NCBI GenBank assembly: GCA_025603075.1
Contig: MU626291.1
Location: 62,001 to 126,000, forward strand
DNA from: Neoconidiobolus thromboides FSU 785
Lineage: Eukaryota; Fungi; Entomophthoromycota
DNA length: 64,000 bases
Direction: 5' to 3'
Numbering within the stretch: the stretch's first letter is position 1; the number at the start of each line of letters is the position of its first letter. The translations under genes and the position numbers were made by a program. Under the pieces are notes generated by a model. It was not told where the DNA came from. It saw only the letters and a program-made list of their open reading frames with translations, and did not search any database. Of this stretch, positions 19,129 through 51,107 are shown piece after piece.

Positions 19129-20096
19129 ACTTTATGCTTTTGATACCAAATTTAAATTCTCAAGGTTACATCTTGCACATAATTTTTAATTTTTAATCAT
19201 GAATTCTCAACTGTTCAATTTACAGTGAAAACTATCAAATAAGATAAAGGGAGCACAAAGGTTATTGAGCAAAACGATGACGGTAAACAATAAAGCACTT
19301 AAAAAGATAATGGCAGCAAACCGAATTTTGACCAGAATAATAGTAATTTTGCAAATAACTAAAATATTGACACCAATAAAAGTATTTAGCATAATAAATA
19401 CAGAAAGCAAACCATTAATAAGCATCAAAACTATGTCAAGGTCAACAATGAACTAAAAAAATTATTACTACTGATAAATGTCAAGGGATGTCGATAAAAG
19501 AGACACTAAATCAATTATTTATTGAGTACGGTAATGCAAAGACAGTAATCGAAAAAGAAAGTGAAGTTATAAAATAAGAATAATAATGGAAAAAAAGTGG
19601 AAGAAAAAAGTCCAATGACGCTATTATACGTTAGCAGTACTTAGAGAAGTCAAGAAAGTTTATACAGAGAATCTAGCACTAAGTTGCAGCAGATACATAG
19701 TGAGCACTACCGAAGAGGTTGTATTAAAGTGATTTCGGATTCAATTCTTAGAGTGTTGAAGTCACTGGATATAATGTTTAAAAGAAATAAAATAAAAATA
19801 GGTATGAGGTTGGGATCAAAAACGAAAAGTATAGTAATGTAGTTATAACAGGAATTAAAGAAATTTGAAAGTTTTTTAGAAATAATAATAGTTATGCTTT
19901 AAAGCAAATATAGATACAAATAATACTAAATATGTAACTGGACATTAATCCATCTTTAGCCACTATACCTATGAAAAAGCAATGAATATTACCCCTTTAA
20001 ATAAAAACAAGTGGTAAATAATCTATTTAACTTTAGTTTTAGGTTTAAAAGTTTATTTAAAATATTTAACTTAACTTTAGAACAAAATGATAAAAT

Positions 20097-21507
20097 TTAA
20101 AGCTTAGGAGGAGCCAAACTCAATAAATCTGCTTTACGCTCAGCTTTTCTGAGGTCAGCAGACGCAGCAATAGCCTGTTCTTCTGGTGAAACTGGGACTA
20201 ATGGCTGCAATTTATTTAGCTGATGGTTTGAGCCATGCTGCATTGTAACAAAGGTAAAGAAACCATCATTAGTGAATTCTTCAACAGAACTACCAGGCTC
20301 CAGCTTTGTAACCATTACATAAACCTCCATACTTTTATTGAATACTTTGGTCACTAGACTACGTAAAATGATAATATCACCAACCCGACTTGGTTTCACA
20401 AATTGAATCGCATCGGAGCTAATATTTTTTTAAGTGTTTTTTTAATTGGAAATTAATTTATCTGGGCTTACCTCGCTGACATTACAACCCCTTTTGCATG
20501 CCTTGTGGCCGATACTGAAGCGCAAGATTCCATCCAGTTCATAATTTGACCACCAAATAAAGTATCTATATTGTTTGCTTGGGAAGGCAAGATAGTATGT
20601 GCAGACTCTGCGTAAGTAGAGCTCGCCTTTGCAGTTGAGGACTAAACAAAAACATAAATCAATATGTAAATAAAGTAAAAGCTAGTCACTTACTAATAAA
20701 TAAGATCTAAAATTTTCTAATTCTTGGGAATATTTGGCAGTTTTTCTAAGTTGCATTCTTTTATTACGCCTCACTTCTGCCTGCTCATAAAGCTGTGTTT
20801 GAAACGAAGTCTCTGGATATAGCTTTGGTAATCGTAATACGTTGTTTTCATCCCTTGGCCCATTGACCAATACAAAAGTTAATAATGAAGAGCAGCCTAT
20901 GTACTTATTAATTAAATTATTTTAAAAGTTAAATTGAAGTTACAAAACCTTGGACCTAAGCCATTGAGGTCATCCACTTCTACAGTTACTTGAACTTCAA
21001 TTGAAGTTTTCCAGCTTCTATTTATTTGGCCTTTAAATATGATAATGGAACCAACCTTTATTGGGGACATGAAATGGACTGCGTCCATACTACGTGTTGG
21101 CTAATTGAAATAGAAGGATTAAGATTGAATTTAATTTAATCAAATACTTGAGTTTACACAAATTATAGCACCTCCCAGTTTACGAATAGCATGAGTGGCC
21201 ACCAAATCGATACTAGATAATATGGAACCTCCTTTTATATAGCCATTGATGGAATCAAACCCTGAGTTGGCCATATTCATTGAAGTTACTCTTAATTTCA
21301 AGTTAAATGTTAGTATACTTAAATTATAATAGCAAATTACTGAGTGGAAGTGATACTCTTTGGTTCAAAATACTTTTGAATTAAGCTTAAGCTCATGGTA
21401 TTATTAAGTATCTCTTGATTTCTTTGTGTAGACATGGTGACACGATTTAATAGAGTTGGTCGTAAAAGCGATTTTATTGATTTAATAAAGGGTTTTATAC
21501 GTTGCAT
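20097..21507 (-). CDS. Acyl-CoA thioesterase with two HotDog domains (multi-exon, possible mitochondrial presequence)
   Basis: GGSILSSID, SMDAVHFMSPIKVGS, ANNIDTLFGGQIMNWME, SSDAIQFVKPSRVGD; first intron 21291-21340 joins TQ|VTSMNMA. Confidence 0.85.
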
Positions 21508-42344: not shown

Positions 42345-42565
42345 ATATTTCAAAATAGATGAGTATCTAGTTAACCATGGTTTGTATAAGTTTTAAGGAT
42401 ACTTTTAAATACAAAGATATTATATGATTTGATATAGCCAAATGGTTTAAGTAATGTGTAATACTTAAGGGAAATAATTATATATTATATTTTTTAAAGG
42501 ACAATTTGTAAATTACAAAAATGAATTAAACTGAAACTTTAATGAGTATTATTTTAAAATTAGAA

Positions 42566-44099
42566 TTAGAAGAGTAATCTTAAAAGTTCATCGGCTTCGG
42601 TATTAACATAAAATTTTAAAGGCTGTTCGAAACCATTGCTAAAATAATAGGTCGTAAATAATGATGAATTATAAAAAATAAATTGTTAACTTACAACTCC
42701 ATATTAAAACAAGTAGAATAAGCCCCCATATTTTCAAAATAAAGCCAGTCATTTAACTCTAATTCTGGCAGCCTTAAGTTAGAATCTGTATTAATTTTAT
42801 CTTTAGCTCCTAACGCTGGTCCCCACAAAGTACAAAACTGTAAGTTTTGCTCTGTTATTTCAGGTAAATAGAGCCCATTTCGAAATAAAAGCTTAGGCTC
42901 GTATAAGATCTCTGGAATAAATGCCCCTTCTGAAAAGGATTTAAATACTCCATCATTCAAGTAATCTAAAATTTAATTTAATTTTACTATTATCTTTTAT
43001 AAATAAATTAGTACTTACACATAATAGATTTCTCTTCGCTATCATTATAGCACACTCTCTTACCAATGACAGTGGTAGCTAAGGTATAAAAAGAAGCAGC
43101 AAAAAAGCGACCAGGCTCAGCAATAAAAGTTAAATTAGCATCTTTAAAATAATCATTCAAAGATAGATTAACAACTTTTGCAATTTTAATAAATTGCTCC
43201 ACATTTTTAATCCCTGGAAAGCCACCACCTATATCCAATATGGACAAATTAAAGCCAACCGATTTAGCTTGATCATAAATGATTCTAGCCCTACGTATAG
43301 TTTCTTTATAACCTTCAGGGTCAAGGCAATCACTACCAACATGAAAGCTTAAGCCTACGACATTAAGGTTAAAATCTTTAGCAGATTGTAGTAATTGTCT
43401 ACAAGCTTCTAATTCAGCACCAAATTTAGAACTAAAAGGAACTTTGGAATGACAGTCCAATGGTAAAATTCTAAGAAATAACTCAGCATTGGGATAATGG
43501 ATATAAATTTTTATCAATTCATCAATGTTATCAAAGGTCATCTTTCGTACATTTACCTCTTTAGCATATTTCAGATGATTCAATTGTTTACACGGATTAG
43601 CATAGATGATTCTGTTCGTTGATATATTATGTTTTAATATTGTTTGAATCTCTTTTTTACTGGCACAATCAAAGCTCATTCCTAATTCTATCATCAATTT
43701 TATTAACATCTTATCCGGATTACTCTTCACTGCATAAAATGGAACCACATCTGGTAAATGTGTCTTCCATAGTTTAAACATTTTGTAAACGGCACCCAGG
43801 TCACCTACTAAAAAAGAGTCCTGTATATTTTCATTTAATAGTTTATATTTGATAAATGCCAAGGGGTCAGTCTTTGGTAATTTTAAGATGCCCTCTTCTT
43901 GATTTAAGAAATTCGGAGACAATAAGGCTTCGTGGATAATGCTTTTTGATATACTGTCTTCGTATTTTGGTACCTTTAATTTGGCGATATTCATAGCTTC
44001 AATATGTGGGCTTCTAACTATTTTTGGTGATTTAGGAGTTAAGTCTAGCTTAAACTCACTGTCTATGTTAGGGCTTCCTACCAATAAGTTGGTGTTCAT
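42566..44099 (-). CDS. Ornithine decarboxylase-like protein lacking the catalytic Cys/Asp loop (3 exons; introns 42966-43018, 42639-42694)
   Basis: PFYAVKSN, FDCAS, YANPCK, KFGA, FHVGS, DIGGGFPG, EPGRF, YYLNDG, GAYS...FNGF are present; WGPTCD is replaced by WGPALG. Confidence 0.9.
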
Positions 44100-44721
44100 G
44101 ATTCAGTTTTTTATAATAATAAAAGGCATTCTATGCTTTTTATTTGATATTTATATAATGTTGTATGCTTTGTTTTGATCATTTTAAAATCGTTGATCTT
44201 ATTTTTATTTTTTTGTAAATCTAATTTTACAATGGTTTATTTTAATTTGATGATTACGAAATTTAAATTTAGTTTGAATTAAAATTAATTTGAAACAGTA
44301 AGATTATTAATAACTTCAGCATTTTATTTTTAATCACATTCCTATATAAATTCTAGATCTTAATATAATGATTATATAGTAATTATATAATAATTTTACA
44401 ACTGATTCATCAATAGGCCTCTTATTTTCATTCCATAGCTTACATTATAAGTTATTATATTCCAACTGTTTATTTTTATATATATGTACTATATTTATTT
44501 ATACTGATTTAAGTTGTCACCGTTTGATAAAAAAAGATCAAGCCTTTTTATAGCAAAGTTTTTCTGAACCTAAAAAATATTATGAATTATAAAATTACAT
44601 AAAACAAAAATAACATTTGCATTAAGATTATGAATCTCGTTTTCAGTATTTTATAAGTGCATACACTTCTAAAAATATTTAGTAACTAAATAACAACTTA
44701 TAATTTTAATTAAATAAATAT

Positions 44722-44871: not shown

Positions 44872-45930
44872 TTAATTGTTAAGTACAACCCTATATCTAA
44901 CTTTACCATCGCGTACTAGTTGTACACCTTCATTACATTTATCCATAGGGTAGTTTTCTATCCAAGGGTAAACCTTATGTTCAGCAGCAAAATCCAACAT
45001 TTTACGGATTTCACAAGGGGATCCAATAGCTGAGCCACCAATAAAAATATTTTTCATAATTAAAGTAAATGGGCGAAGAGTAACGTTTGATTCTGGTACT
45101 GCTAATAATATAATTTTACCATCAATATCCATCCAATTTGCAAAAGTATCCCATTGAGAGTCATTAGCATTACTTGTGACAATAAGATATTTAAGAGTAT
45201 CTTTAATCTTATCTGCTTCTTCTTCATTACTATAAGCAATGAAATGTTTGGCACCCATCTTTTTAGCATCGTTTTCTTTGGAATGAGAATGTGATAAGGC
45301 ATAAACTTCACAACCCATAGCATTAGCAAATTGAATAGCTAAATGACCTAATCCACCAATACCAATGACACCAACTTTGTCACCTGATTTAAATCCATTA
45401 TGAAGCATTGGTGTAAACACAGTGGCACCAGCGCATAGTAATGGTGCAGCATAGTCCGAAGGAATGCTTTCTGGAATAAGGAAACAAAAATCTTCTTGGA
45501 CATGAACTGCTTCCGCATACCCACCATAGGTGGTAGATCCATCAATATCCCTTTTTGAATTATAAGTGAGTCCGCTTTTCTTACAGAATACTTCTCTTTG
45601 GCGCTTACAAGCATAGCAATCATCATTCATACATGCAGCACATTGTGCACCTACCCCTACTCTATCCCCTACTTTAAGCTTTTGTACCTTATCACCTACT
45701 GCGGTTATCTCACCTACAATTTCATGACCAACAATCACTGGGTAATTAGTTGGACCCCATCCACTGTCCATGGTATGAAGATCAGAACCACAAATACCGC
45801 AGTGACTAATCTTGATTTCTACATCATTAGGTTGAAGTGGGGCAGCGTCATAAGTATATTTGACTAATTTTTCATCTTTTCCATGACAAGCATAGCCACT
45901 GATTTTGTTGTATTTTCCTGTATTTGACAT
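44872..45930 (-). CDS. Zn-dependent NADP alcohol dehydrogenase, cinnamyl-alcohol dehydrogenase (ADH6/7-like) family
   Basis: CGICGSDLH, GHEIVG, structural Zn Cys cluster, APLLCAGATVF, GIGGLGHL, VRYRVVL. Confidence 0.95.
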   Translation of the reverse strand: MSNTGKYNKISGYACHGKDEKLVKYTYDAAPLQPNDVEIKISHCGICGSDLHTMDSGWGPTNYPVIVGHEIVGEITAVGDKVQKLKVGDRVGVGAQCAACMNDDCYACKRQREVFCKKSGLTYNSKRDIDGSTTYGGYAEAVHVQEDFCFLIPESIPSDYAAPLLCAGATVFTPMLHNGFKSGDKVGVIGIGGLGHLAIQFANAMGCEVYALSHSHSKENDAKKMGAKHFIAYSNEEEADKIKDTLKYLIVTSNANDSQWDTFANWMDIDGKIILLAVPESNVTLRPFTLIMKNIFIGGSAIGSPCEIRKMLDFAAEHKVYPWIENYPMDKCNEGVQLVRDGKVRYRVVLNN

Positions 45931-49436: not shown

Positions 49437-51107
49437 ATGAAGCTCAACTTACTTTTACTACTAGTTACTATTTTAATTTATCAAGCTCAGTCTATGAAGG
49501 TATTGATAAGTATGACCTTTGGTTCGCGTTCTCATATAAAAAATGTATTTGAAATAGGAAAAGTATTACAGGAACGCGGCGATCAAGTAGCATACATGTC
49601 ATTAAAGCCAATGTTACGCTTTGCTGATGGTTATAATGTAACTAAATTCCAAGTAGGGCCAGATGATATTCAAATTGATGATTTACGTGGAATAAGTGAA
49701 TTAAATCAAACACCTGTTAATCCATTAGCAGATACTGTTAATGCTTTAGTGGATGGACTTCCTATAGTTTTTCGTACTACTTTTGAGGATACTTTATCGG
49801 TTATTGATGAATATAAACCAGATGTTATGATTTGTGATTTCTTTTCATCTTCTTGTATTGAAGCTGCTTATCACCGCCATATCCCACTTATTGTAGGGTT
49901 CCAAACTTTGGATGGTCCTTATGTTCCACCCCCTTATATCACTGGAACTTTATCCTATTTCCCCACTACACTCGCCAATTTAAGCTTTGGGCAACGTTTT
50001 TACTCAACGGTCATACATCCACTTACTGTATTGCCTTCCTTTTTAGCACTCAATTATAGATTAAACGTTGAAAGAGCACGTTATAACTTACCAACTACTG
50101 TTGTAACGAATGTAGGCAATTGGGAAAATGCACTCAAATTATGCAACACTTTTATGGGTTTTGAAGGTGCTAGACCTTTAGATCCTAGCTTTAAATTGGT
50201 TGGCCCTATAATGTCAGAAGAACATGCTCCATTAAGTGACGGATTAAAACAGTTTTTAGATAAAAGACAAAAAGTAGTTTATATTGCATTTGGAAGTGGA
50301 GTTCAACTAAGCAGTAAAGATGTTAATATCATATTCAATAGTGTTAAAAAACTAGTAGAATATCAAAACGCTGATGGGATTATTTGGGCTTTAGGAAAAA
50401 CTCAAAAGGCTACTTTCAATCAAACTGATATTAATATTACTCATAATGGTATCAATCTAACCGCTGAGGACTTATTAAACAATGCACATCCAAACATTAA
50501 GTTTTTAAATTGGGCTCCTCAAGTTGCTATATTAAACCATGAGAATACTAAACTTTTTATATCTCATGGTGGTTTAGAATCTGCTTTTGAATCCATGTAC
50601 TCTGGAACTCCAATTTTAACCATTCCTTTCTTTGGTGACCAATATCGTAATGCTCGTAAAGTGGAAGAAATGGGCTTTGGTGGATATTCAGATAGATTTA
50701 CGCAAACATCGATCTCCCTTTATAATAAAATTGGCGAAATGCTAGTCGATAAAGACCAAAGTAGAGCCAATGCTATGCAAAAATGGCAATTGATAGCAAA
50801 AACCAATTCTAAAAAGAAATACGAAGCTGCCGATATTATTCAAGAATACGTTGCTCTCTCTAAAGTTTGTAGAAATAAACCTGGATATAAAAATAAAAAT
50901 CCAGGCTGCGAATTGGAACATCTTCTTCCCCTTTATCAATCAATTAATCCTTTGATCGCTTTTGGTGTCGATTCTATAGTTTTTGCTATTGCTATTATAA
51001 TTACTATAAGCTTACCTATTATTTATCTTGCTTCTATTCTTATCAAGCAGTTGCTTAAAATCATAAGAAATCATACTCATATTAAGAATAAGTTAAAATC
51101 TCAATGA
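49437..51107 (+). CDS. Membrane-anchored UDP-glycosyltransferase, GT1 (UDPGT family)
   Basis: Signal peptide, GSRSH, UGT signature WAPQVAILNH..TKLFISHGG.ESAFE..YSGTPILTIPFFGDQYRNA, C-terminal TM helix, KLKSQ end. Confidence 0.93.
   Translation: MKLNLLLLLVTILIYQAQSMKVLISMTFGSRSHIKNVFEIGKVLQERGDQVAYMSLKPMLRFADGYNVTKFQVGPDDIQIDDLRGISELNQTPVNPLADTVNALVDGLPIVFRTTFEDTLSVIDEYKPDVMICDFFSSSCIEAAYHRHIPLIVGFQTLDGPYVPPPYITGTLSYFPTTLANLSFGQRFYSTVIHPLTVLPSFLALNYRLNVERARYNLPTTVVTNVGNWENALKLCNTFMGFEGARPLDPSFKLVGPIMSEEHAPLSDGLKQFLDKRQKVVYIAFGSGVQLSSKDVNIIFNSVKKLVEYQNADGIIWALGKTQKATFNQTDINITHNGINLTAEDLLNNAHPNIKFLNWAPQVAILNHENTKLFISHGGLESAFESMYSGTPILTIPFFGDQYRNARKVEEMGFGGYSDRFTQTSISLYNKIGEMLVDKDQSRANAMQKWQLIAKTNSKKKYEAADIIQEYVALSKVCRNKPGYKNKNPGCELEHLLPLYQSINPLIAFGVDSIVFAIAIIITISLPIIYLASILIKQLLKIIRNHTHIKNKLKSQ

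What the first reader, a model, noticed from the sequence alone, without database searches (positions are those of the whole stretch)
42566..44099. ODC homologue missing the catalytic Cys360/Asp361 loop: candidate fungal antizyme inhibitor or new-specificity enzyme
Seen: the gene is intact, with three exons, canonical introns and FNGF restored by splicing. It keeps the PLP-barrel residues (Lys in AVKSN, FDCAS, KFG, HVGS, GGGF, EPGR, GAY). The normally invariant WGPTCD(G/S)xD is WGPALGAKD, YGSFNC is FKSFSE, and no Asp332-like residue is evident in the specificity loop. Established: in eukaryotic ODC, Cys360 protonates the intermediate and Asp361/Asp332 bind the substrate amine; mammalian antizyme inhibitors are catalytically dead ODC paralogues that sequester antizyme. 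To my knowledge such inhibitors are not established in fungi. Inference: a pseudoenzyme regulator of polyamine synthesis, or a PLP enzyme with a different substrate or reaction.
Basis: partly seen in the sequence, partly recalled or inferred. Interest (0 to 1): 0.72.

Follow-up and report, generated by a model that had tools for sequence, protein, structure and literature searches.

The report
Remodelled ODC-fold enzyme family in Entomophthorales
This expressed, strongly conserved fungal gene is a copy of ornithine decarboxylase that keeps every cofactor-binding residue but has swapped the three residues that handle ornithine for non-acidic ones, so it most likely acts on a different amino acid and is not a dead regulator.

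Summary
The three-exon minus-strand gene (44099..43019, 42965..42695, 42638..42566) is Neoconidiobolus thromboides KAI9296782.1. Spliced RNA contigs of a ~95% identical relative skip exactly both introns.

It is an ODC-fold protein (Pfam 2.4e-76; AF2 pLDDT 89, TM 0.9 to human ODC). It keeps 17 of the 20 classic ODC residues but has D332->Ile, C360->Leu and D361->Gly.

The same WGPALGAKDKIN and FKSFSEG motifs occur in a second N. thromboides paralogue and in two genes each of Entomophthora muscae and Massospora cicadina. They appear nowhere else among 1.84 billion representative proteins.

Selection is purifying: 34 synonymous against 6 non-synonymous differences, dN/dS 0.05-0.18. All 17 retained cofactor, dimer and carboxylate sites are invariant in the clade (P about 1e-7). 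The few clade-fixed changes lie in the segments known to form ODC's substrate pocket.

Best reading (about 0.55): a lineage-specific PLP enzyme with a non-basic substrate or altered reaction. An antizyme-inhibitor-like or dominant-negative pseudoenzyme remains possible (about 0.25), because the antizyme-binding element residues are kept. Unlike AZIN1, it keeps the PLP and dimer residues and has no PPW uORF.

The scan's notes report a separate ODC and an antizyme in this genome; I could not verify either. The scan had already noted this stretch and both paralogues.

The parts
43019..44099 (-). Exon 1: N-terminal tail plus the PLP-binding TIM barrel (Orn_Arg_deC_N). The alternative start codon is at 43994..43992.
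   Evidence: ORF and Pfam hit 2.4e-76. Matches P0001 from Met36 onward. RNA contigs lie on it and end at 44083-44085.
43725..43727 (-). Codon AAG for the Schiff-base lysine (Lys69 equivalent; K90 of P0001) in FYAVKSNPD.
   Evidence: Sequence. Invariant in all 17 aligned homologues.
42966..43018 (-). Intron 1, 53 nt, phase 1, GTAAGT..TAG.
   Evidence: Joint 42965/43019 in contigs of X2 and X3. Same position and phase in paralogue P0002.
42695..42965 (-). Exon 2: C-terminal beta-sheet domain carrying the remodelled substrate-pocket segments.
   Evidence: Pfam Orn_DAP_Arg_deC 1.9e-06. Sequence.
42925..42945 (-). FKSFSEG, replacing the canonical YGSFNC(I). Changes are Y323F, G324K, N327S and C328E.
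   Evidence: Lys324 and Phe323 are fixed in all seven clade members.
42916..42918 (-). ATT = Ile at the Asp332 position.
   Evidence: MAFFT alignment: Ile in all seven clade proteins, Asp in at least 9 of 10 canonical ODCs.
42799..42825 (-). WGPALGAKD, replacing WGPTCD(S/G)xD. Changes are T359A, C360L, D361G and L/I363K; D364 is kept.
   Evidence: Identical peptide in P0003, P0005, P0006, P0007 and P0010, with different codons.
42639..42694 (-). Intron 2, 56 nt, phase 2, GTAAGT..TAG.
   Evidence: Joint 42638/42695 in a contig of X3. One X4 contig retains the intron. Same position in P0002.
42566..42638 (-). Exon 3: completes FNGF (Phe397/Asn398) and the C-terminal helix; stop TAA at 42568..42566.
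44872..45930 (-). Neighbouring gene, same strand, 772 bp upstream: an Adh6/Ahr/CAD-type NADPH aldehyde reductase. It is context only; a functional link is not shown.
   Evidence: Pfam ADH_N and ADH_zinc_N. NCBIfam Ahr 2.9e-100. PDB yeast Adh6 1piw 9e-76.

Best explanation
The gene encodes a dimeric, PLP-binding enzyme of the ODC fold that no longer uses ornithine. It belongs to a family that arose by duplication of ODC and is known so far only in Entomophthorales: N. thromboides (three copies), E. muscae and M. cicadina.

Shown: the cofactor cradle is untouched (Lys69, Asp88, Glu94, Arg154, His197, Ser200, Gly235-237, Glu274, Arg277, Tyr389). So are the dimer contacts (Lys169, Asp364, the aromatic residue at 331, Phe397) and the carboxylate site (Phe397/Asn398). 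The two acidic residues that hold ornithine's distal amine are now Ile (332) and Gly (361). The Calpha proton donor Cys360 is Leu. Tyr323 is Phe and Gly324 is Lys.

Inferred: the pocket formed across the dimer interface is now non-acidic and largely hydrophobic, with a new lysine at its rim. It would therefore bind a non-basic L-amino acid. After decarboxylation on PLP, with no Cys360, the quinonoid intermediate would be protonated by another group (Lys69 or water) to give an amine. Alternatively it would be protonated at C4' or oxidised, giving an aldehyde plus PMP or ammonia. T. brucei ODC C360A does this (own knowledge: Jackson et al. 2000). The substrate and product are unknown.
For: ODC-family membership and fold.

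Residues: 17 of the 20 critical ODC residues (list from PMC5518511) are kept in all seven clade proteins. Only D332, C360 and D361 are changed, and changed identically. Within the clade 41% of core columns are invariant, yet all 17 retained sites are invariant (hypergeometric P = 1.2e-7).

Fixed changes: only 10 positions are fixed in the clade and differ from residues that are near-invariant in canonical ODCs. They are 70, one A->T change at P0001 residue 232, 323, 324, 332, 359, 360, 361, 390 and 394. Nine of the 10 lie in or beside the segments that line the ODC substrate pocket (pocket geometry from own knowledge, not measured here).

Selection and expression: 34 synonymous against 6 non-synonymous differences to a ~95% identical relative. 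Pairwise dN/dS is 0.05-0.18. Spliced RNA contigs exist.

Distribution: the clade has 100/100 support on a long stem. No other protein with this C-terminal domain turned up in a word-based search or in an exhaustive scan of 1.84 billion representatives.

Regulation: none of the six clade loci examined has a PPW uORF upstream.

Precedent: mouse Gm853 is an ODC paralogue once suspected to be an AZIN. It is a leucine decarboxylase and does not bind antizyme (PMC6313458, PMC7671201).
Against: There are no biochemical data for any member. Loss of Cys360 strongly impairs normal ODC turnover, and recurrent ODC homologues lacking key residues have been interpreted as regulators (Ivanov et al. 2010, cited; the paper itself could not be read). 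The antizyme-binding-element residues K115, A123, E138, L139 and K141 are all retained, so antizyme binding is not excluded. Conserved PLP residues could serve fold stability only. Pocket geometry was inferred from alignment, not from coordinates. The gene neighbourhoods (aldehyde reductase, UGT and amidases here; P450 and tyrosinase near P0003) are not conserved between paralogues.
Confidence: 0.55

Rival explanations
1. It is a catalytically dead regulator of polyamine synthesis. Either it acts as an antizyme decoy like the animal antizyme inhibitors, or it is a partner that heterodimerises with the true ODC and spoils both shared active sites.
For: C360, D361 and D332 are lost. The five antizyme-binding-element residues and the dimer-interface residues are kept. 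The scan notes report an antizyme gene and a separate ODC with a PPW uORF in this genome (not verified here). Recurrent emergence of inactive ODC homologues is described in the literature (Ivanov 2010, cited).
Against: AZIN1 has lost PLP binding and dimerisation (S277, S331, E332, D389). This clade keeps all those residues invariant (P about 1e-7). A decoy has no need for a precisely conserved new active-site loop, yet ALGAKDKIN and FKSFSEG are identical in six genes. There is no PPW uORF upstream, unlike AZIN1 and many ODC mRNAs. Canonical ODCs also keep the antizyme-element residues, so their presence is uninformative. The family has two or three copies in each species sampled, which seems unnecessary for a stoichiometric decoy (inference).
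Confidence: 0.25
2. It is still an ornithine or diamino-acid decarboxylase that works with an unorthodox active site, possibly the main ODC of these fungi.
For: No canonical ODC of N. thromboides, E. muscae or M. cicadina appeared in the best 120 hits of either full-length search. NCBI names the E. muscae and Massospora proteins 'ornithine decarboxylase'.
Against: Both residues that bind the distal amine are replaced by Ile and Gly, and a lysine is added at 324. The scan reports a separate ODC gene with the polyamine-sensing PPW uORF in this genome. None of the three paralogues has one, so that gene is a fourth locus. The hit lists show only the best 120 of more than 7,700 hits, so absence there proves little. 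The NCBI names are automatic.
Confidence: 0.08
3. It is a decaying pseudogene or an assembly or sequencing artefact.
For: None beyond the loss of textbook catalytic residues.
Against: The reading frame is intact, the RNA is spliced, the 40 listed differences split 34 synonymous to 6 non-synonymous, and dN/dS is at most 0.18. The identical motif is encoded by different codons in three species.
Confidence: 0.02

Closest known systems
Eukaryotic ornithine decarboxylase (EC 4.1.1.17; human 1D7K/7S3F, T. brucei 1F3T)
   Same: Same two-domain fold (TM about 0.9, 40% identity). Same PLP cradle, dimer-interface residues, carboxylate site and antizyme-element residues.
   Different: D332->Ile, C360->Leu, D361->Gly, Y323F, G324K and T359A. 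No PPW uORF. Sits on a long separate branch.
Antizyme inhibitors AZIN1/AZIN2 (animals)
   Same: ODC paralogues lacking residues needed for ornithine decarboxylation; the antizyme-binding element is conserved.
   Different: AZIN1 does not bind PLP and is monomeric, with S277, S331, E332 and D389 (PMC6313458). This clade keeps R277, the aromatic residue at 331 and Y389 invariant. It has an independent, fungal origin. Antizyme binding is untested.
Mouse leucine decarboxylase Gm853/ODCrp
   Same: An ODC paralogue first suspected to be an AZIN. It is a homodimeric PLP decarboxylase of a neutral amino acid and does not bind antizyme (PMC5518511, PMC6313458, PMC7671201).
   Different: Gm853 keeps all 20-24 canonical residues, including C360, D361 and D332. 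The fungal clade has replaced them, so its chemistry may differ. The two are not orthologous.
T. brucei ODC C360A/S mutants and fold-type-I aromatic aldehyde synthases (analogy for mechanism)
   Same: Removing the Calpha proton donor diverts a PLP decarboxylase towards decarboxylation-coupled transamination or oxidative deamination, giving an aldehyde. This rests on my own knowledge; related chemistry is reviewed in PMC7497351.
   Different: The first are laboratory mutants and the second are enzymes of another fold. No natural ODC-fold aldehyde synthase is known to me, and nothing here shows this activity.
PBCV-1 arginine decarboxylase (2NV9/2NVA)
   Same: An ODC-fold enzyme whose substrate changed through changes in the 332 region. 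It is a strong structural match (TMt 0.94-0.95).
   Different: It keeps the Cys-Asp pair and still binds a basic substrate.

Membership tests
Group IV (fold-type III) ODC-like decarboxylases | Orn_Arg_deC_N TIM barrel plus Orn_DAP_Arg_deC beta-sheet domain | tested here: met
   Pfam 2.4e-76 and 1.9e-06. AF2 model with pLDDT 89; best PDB matches are ODCs, TMt 0.89-0.95.
Group IV (fold-type III) ODC-like decarboxylases | Schiff-base Lys69 and the PLP-binding set (D88, E94, R154, H197, S200, G235-237, E274, R277, Y389) | tested here: met
   All present and invariant in the clade.
Eukaryotic ornithine decarboxylase (functional ODC) | Cys360 proton donor in WGPTCD | tested here: not met
   Leu (TTA, 42813..42811). 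Leu in all six ALGAKD members; Cys only in paralogue P0002.
Eukaryotic ornithine decarboxylase (functional ODC) | Asp361 and Asp332 binding the substrate's distal amine | tested here: not met
   Gly and Ile, fixed in the clade.
Eukaryotic ornithine decarboxylase (functional ODC) | Decarboxylates L-ornithine; rescues polyamine auxotrophy | not testable with these tools
   Needs an enzyme assay or yeast spe1 complementation.
Antizyme inhibitor | ODC homologue without ODC catalytic competence | tested here: inconclusive
   C360, D361 and D332 are lost, but the whole PLP machinery is kept.
Antizyme inhibitor | Loss of PLP binding and dimerisation, as in AZIN1 (S277, S331, E332, D389) | tested here: not met
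   R277, Phe/Tyr331, Y389, K169 and D364 are retained and invariant.
Antizyme inhibitor | Antizyme-binding element (K115, A123, E138, L139, K141) retained | tested here: met
   All five are present in the seven clade proteins. Canonical ODCs keep them too, so this does not discriminate.
Antizyme inhibitor | Binds antizyme more tightly than ODC and releases ODC | not testable with these tools
   Needs co-IP or activity rescue with the N. thromboides antizyme.
Antizyme inhibitor | Polyamine-responsive PPW uORF in the leader (AZIN1 and many ODC mRNAs) | tested here: not met
   No PPW/PPF/PSW peptide in any frame up to 2.4-4 kb upstream of the six clade loci examined. The canonical transcript L003 has one.
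Leucine decarboxylase (Gm853) type | Keeps all canonical ODC residues; vertebrate orthology | tested here: not met
   Three residues are replaced. The clade is separate and fungal.

The most novel reading that the evidence does not exclude
The clade is a natural 'aldehyde synthase' of the ODC fold. Cys360 is replaced by Leu and the pocket is hydrophobic, so the enzyme decarboxylates a neutral or aromatic amino acid. It then releases the aldehyde, by C4' protonation or O2-dependent deamination, instead of the amine. In N. thromboides the Adh6/Ahr-type NADPH aldehyde reductase encoded 772 bp upstream on the same strand then reduces that aldehyde. Together they would form a two-gene, PLP-based route from amino acid to alcohol.
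Probability: 0.1. Interest if true: 0.75.

Novelty: new variant of a known kind. Interest (0 to 1): 0.5.

Why it matters
ODC paralogues lacking catalytic residues are usually filed as 'inactive, probably regulatory'. This family shows a different pattern. The losses are exactly the substrate-specific residues, the replacements are frozen across three species, and the cofactor site is under clear constraint. That pattern is the signature of a new enzyme activity.

Finding the substrate would add a reaction to the ODC fold. It could also bear on the amine or aldehyde metabolism of insect-pathogenic Entomophthorales, a group that includes Massospora, which is known for producing unusual amines (own knowledge). 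The finding also warns that the 'ornithine decarboxylase' labels in the E. muscae and Massospora annotations are probably wrong for these genes.

Tried and rejected
1) Finding the canonical ODC of this genome. The scan's notes report an ODC with a PPW uORF, and an antizyme, on other pieces, but I could not fetch those pieces.

The best canonical hit, P0009, comes from transcript contigs L003/L004 and has WGPTCDSMD and a PPW uORF. It has no close named relative. Its GC is 41% in the coding sequence and 45% in the leader, against 26-37% for the genes of this window. It therefore probably belongs to another organism. Look-ups by sequence in the scan's notes were blank, which means nothing.

2) Conserved gene neighbourhood. 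The E. muscae and Massospora loci are gene-poor within +/-8 kb, and the three N. thromboides paralogues have different neighbours. This gave no support.

3) Order of events for P0002 (WGPSCAAID). The tree places it sister to P0001 (97/94) and the two share both introns. However, P0002 carries the canonical states C70, C360 and I363, and the AU test does not reject monophyly of the six ALGAKD proteins (p = 0.18). This is unresolved.

4) dS is saturated between genera, so only within-family and strain-level ratios are usable.

5) The Ivanov 2010 paper was not available. No paper linking ODC with Conidiobolus or Entomophthorales was found.

6) NCBIfam gave only sub-threshold hits to bacterial families.

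Full report
**What is there.** The window is AT-rich (21-34% GC). The best protein match identifies it as Neoconidiobolus thromboides FSU 785 (Entomophthorales), contig MU626291.1 of GCA_025603075.1.

The finding is a minus-strand gene of three exons: 44099..43019, 42965..42695 and 42638..42566. The two introns are short, 53 and 56 nt, both GTAAGT..TAG. The exon translations are identical to NCBI protein KAI9296782.1 (P0001, 439 aa), which starts at the internal ATG 43994.

I did not send a joined three-exon translation to any search. The database protein P0001 was used by reference instead. The only use of a joined sequence was, where a codon index across the exons was held in memory to classify differences.

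**Expression and splicing.** Contigs of public runs were laid on 42400-44400. One run, X1, carries 100% identical fragments. Three runs of a ~95% identical relative (X2-X4, 'organism B') cover nearly the whole gene. Contigs of X2 and X3 skip exactly 42966-43018 and 42639-42694. These are therefore spliced transcripts, and both introns are confirmed. One X4 contig retains intron 2.

The contigs end at 44083-44085, 14-16 nt short of ATG 44099. It therefore stays open whether translation starts at 44099 or at 43994.

**Family and fold.** Pfam finds Orn_Arg_deC_N (2.4e-76) and Orn_DAP_Arg_deC. The nearest solved structures are human, mouse and T. brucei ODC (E about 1e-90 to 1e-86), then AZIN1 (1e-69) and PBCV-1 arginine decarboxylase. 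An AlphaFold2 model (pLDDT 89, pTM 0.87; only residues 1-32 are disordered) superposes on human ODC with TMt about 0.9.

**The active site.** I used the list of 20 residues critical for ODC (PMC5518511, quoting Ivanov et al. 2010) and an alignment with ten canonical ODCs. The protein keeps K69, D88, E94, R154, K169, G171, H197, S200, G235-237, E274, R277, D364, G387, Y389 and F397.

It has Ile at 332, Leu at 360 and Gly at 361. Additional changes are Y323F, G324K, T359A, N327S and C328E. It can be sharpened on one point: Asp332 is not merely 'not evident' but is replaced by a conserved Ile.

**It is a conserved family, not an accident.** The same peptides, FKSFSEG and WGPALGAKDKIN, occur in:
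- a second N. thromboides gene (P0003, intronless);
- two Entomophthora muscae genes (P0005, P0007);
- two Massospora cicadina genes (P0006, P0010).

The motif is encoded with different codons in these genes. A third N. thromboides paralogue, P0002, has WGPSCAAID. It keeps Cys360 but also lacks Asp361 and Asp332.

A search restricted to the C-terminal domain drops from 144 bits (these proteins) to 69 bits (ordinary ODCs). An exhaustive HMMER scan of 1.84 billion cluster representatives finds only one representative at E<=1e-30, the cluster of P0001 itself. The next-best hits that I fetched are all WGPTCD proteins. Among 460 fetched homologues the ALG motif occurs only in the six Entomophthorales proteins.

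In a maximum-likelihood tree the seven proteins form a 100/100 clade on a long stem of 1.0 substitutions per site. The clade sits outside the fungal and animal canonical ODCs, a position that is probably a long-branch effect.

**Selection.**
- Of the 40 listed differences between the window and organism B, 34 are synonymous and 6 are not.
- Nei-Gojobori dN/dS is 0.18 (P0001 exon 1 vs P0003), 0.16 (P0005 vs P0007) and about 0.05 (Entomophthora vs Massospora). dS is close to saturation, so these ratios are rough.
- Within the clade only 41% of core columns are invariant, yet all 17 retained critical sites are invariant (hypergeometric P = 1.2e-7).
- Only ten positions are fixed in the six ALGAKD proteins and differ from a residue that is near-invariant in canonical ODCs: 70, one A->T change at P0001 residue 232, 323, 324, 332, 359, 360, 361, 390 and 394. 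Nine of the ten lie in or next to the segments that form the ODC substrate pocket across the dimer interface. That placement rests on my knowledge of the ODC structures, not on measured distances.

This is the pattern of a redesigned pocket on an intact catalytic platform. Relaxation would look different.

**Enzyme or regulator?** Animal AZIN1 is a monomer that cannot bind PLP. It carries S277, S331, E332 and D389 in place of the ODC residues (PMC6313458). The fungal clade keeps all of these.

None of the six clade loci examined has a PPW uORF within 2.4-4 kb upstream. Such polyamine-sensing uORFs precede AZIN1 and many ODC genes (my knowledge of Ivanov et al. 2008, which is listed), and one is present in the canonical ODC transcript L003.

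Mouse Gm853 is a precedent. It was suspected to be a third AZIN and proved to be a leucine decarboxylase that does not bind antizyme.

On the other side, the five conserved residues of the antizyme-binding element (K115, A123, E138, L139, K141) are all present. The dimer-interface residues are kept, so heterodimers with the real ODC are conceivable. The scan's notes also report an antizyme gene and a separate ODC with a PPW uORF elsewhere in this genome.

I could not fetch those loci. The presence of a canonical ODC therefore rests on unverified notes, plus one indirect point: none of the three paralogues has a PPW uORF, so the reported gene must be a fourth locus.

**Most likely mechanism.** Shown: a PLP-binding, probably dimeric ODC-fold protein under purifying selection, with Ile332, Leu360, Gly361, Phe323 and Lys324.

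Inferred: the pocket no longer attracts a cationic side chain, and it binds a non-basic amino acid. Decarboxylation can still proceed, since K69, H197, E274 and the F397/N398 carboxylate site are intact. Without Cys360, the carbanionic intermediate has two possible fates. It may be protonated by another group to give an amine. Or it may be diverted to C4' protonation or oxidation to give an aldehyde, as in T. brucei ODC C360A (own knowledge).

The gene directly upstream on the same strand (44872-45930) is an Adh6/Ahr/CAD-type NADPH aldehyde reductase. A UGT and amidases lie further on. P0003 lies between a P450 and a tyrosinase. These neighbourhoods suit small-molecule metabolism. They are not conserved between paralogues, however, and cannot be assessed in the gene-sparse E. 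muscae and Massospora loci. I treat them as a lead only.

**Open points.**
- P0002 conflict. The tree (97/94) and two shared intron positions make P0002 the sister of P0001, which would mean Cys360 was regained. Its canonical-like C70, C360 and I363 suggest instead an early intermediate. The AU test does not decide (p = 0.18).
- Origin of P0009. The origin of the canonical transcript P0009 is unknown.

**Verdict.** Residual ODC activity (about 0.08) and decay or artefact (about 0.02) are unlikely.

It is a new, lineage-restricted variant of a known kind of thing, a diverged ODC paralogue. I found no description of it in the searchable literature. The scan had already noted this stretch and both paralogues in other windows.

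Noticed in passing
window 44872-45930 (-): An Adh6/Ahr/cinnamyl-alcohol-dehydrogenase-type NADPH aldehyde reductase lies 772 bp upstream of the ODC-like gene on the same strand. A UGT (49437-51107) and three amidase genes or fragments follow. This could be a small-molecule metabolism neighbourhood.
   Followed up: partly
L001:4001-5454 (P0002, KAI9293278.1): The third N. thromboides paralogue has WGPSCAAID: Cys360 kept, Asp361 and Asp332 lost. It shares both intron positions and phases with the window gene. It also carries the canonical-like states C70 and I363, which conflicts with its tree position as sister of P0001.
   Followed up: partly
L002:3758-4000 upstream of P0003: The NCBI model of P0003 starts at MEDSFLV. 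An in-frame ORF of 81 codons beginning MDYSLQ lies directly upstream, so the annotated protein is probably N-terminally truncated. This fits the 1407-letter note of the scan.
   Followed up: partly
L006 and L007 (E. muscae contig QTSX02002984.1, 137594-154835 and 158818-176059): P0007 is encoded twice, identically, in opposite orientations about 20 kb apart on one contig. This is a recent inverted duplication or an assembly duplicate.
   Followed up: no
L003:1-325 / L004 (Logan SRR5256710; JGI 3300003307): This transcript contig of unknown origin encodes a canonical ODC (P0009, WGPTCDSMD). Its leader contains a stop-terminated frame ending ..GAPPWSVA*, the PPW-type polyamine-sensing uORF. The nearest named relatives are only about 60% identical (Mortierellomycetes, chytrids, Basidiobolus).
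   Followed up: partly
window 44083-44099: RNA contigs of the relative end at 44083-44085, just inside the ORF that starts at ATG 44099. The mRNA 5' end may lie downstream of that ATG, which would favour the NCBI start at 43994.
   Followed up: no
L009:4488-6005 and 19512-21164: A cytochrome P450 gene and a tyrosinase gene flank paralogue P0003 within 10 kb, as an earlier scan note said.
   Followed up: partly
proteins P0302, P0341, P0357, P0384, P0388, P0376, P0449: Other ODC homologues in the hit lists have independently altered Cys360/Asp361 motifs (TLS, TLD, TGD, SGD, TSD, TCA). This is consistent with recurrent loss of these residues in other lineages.
   Followed up: no
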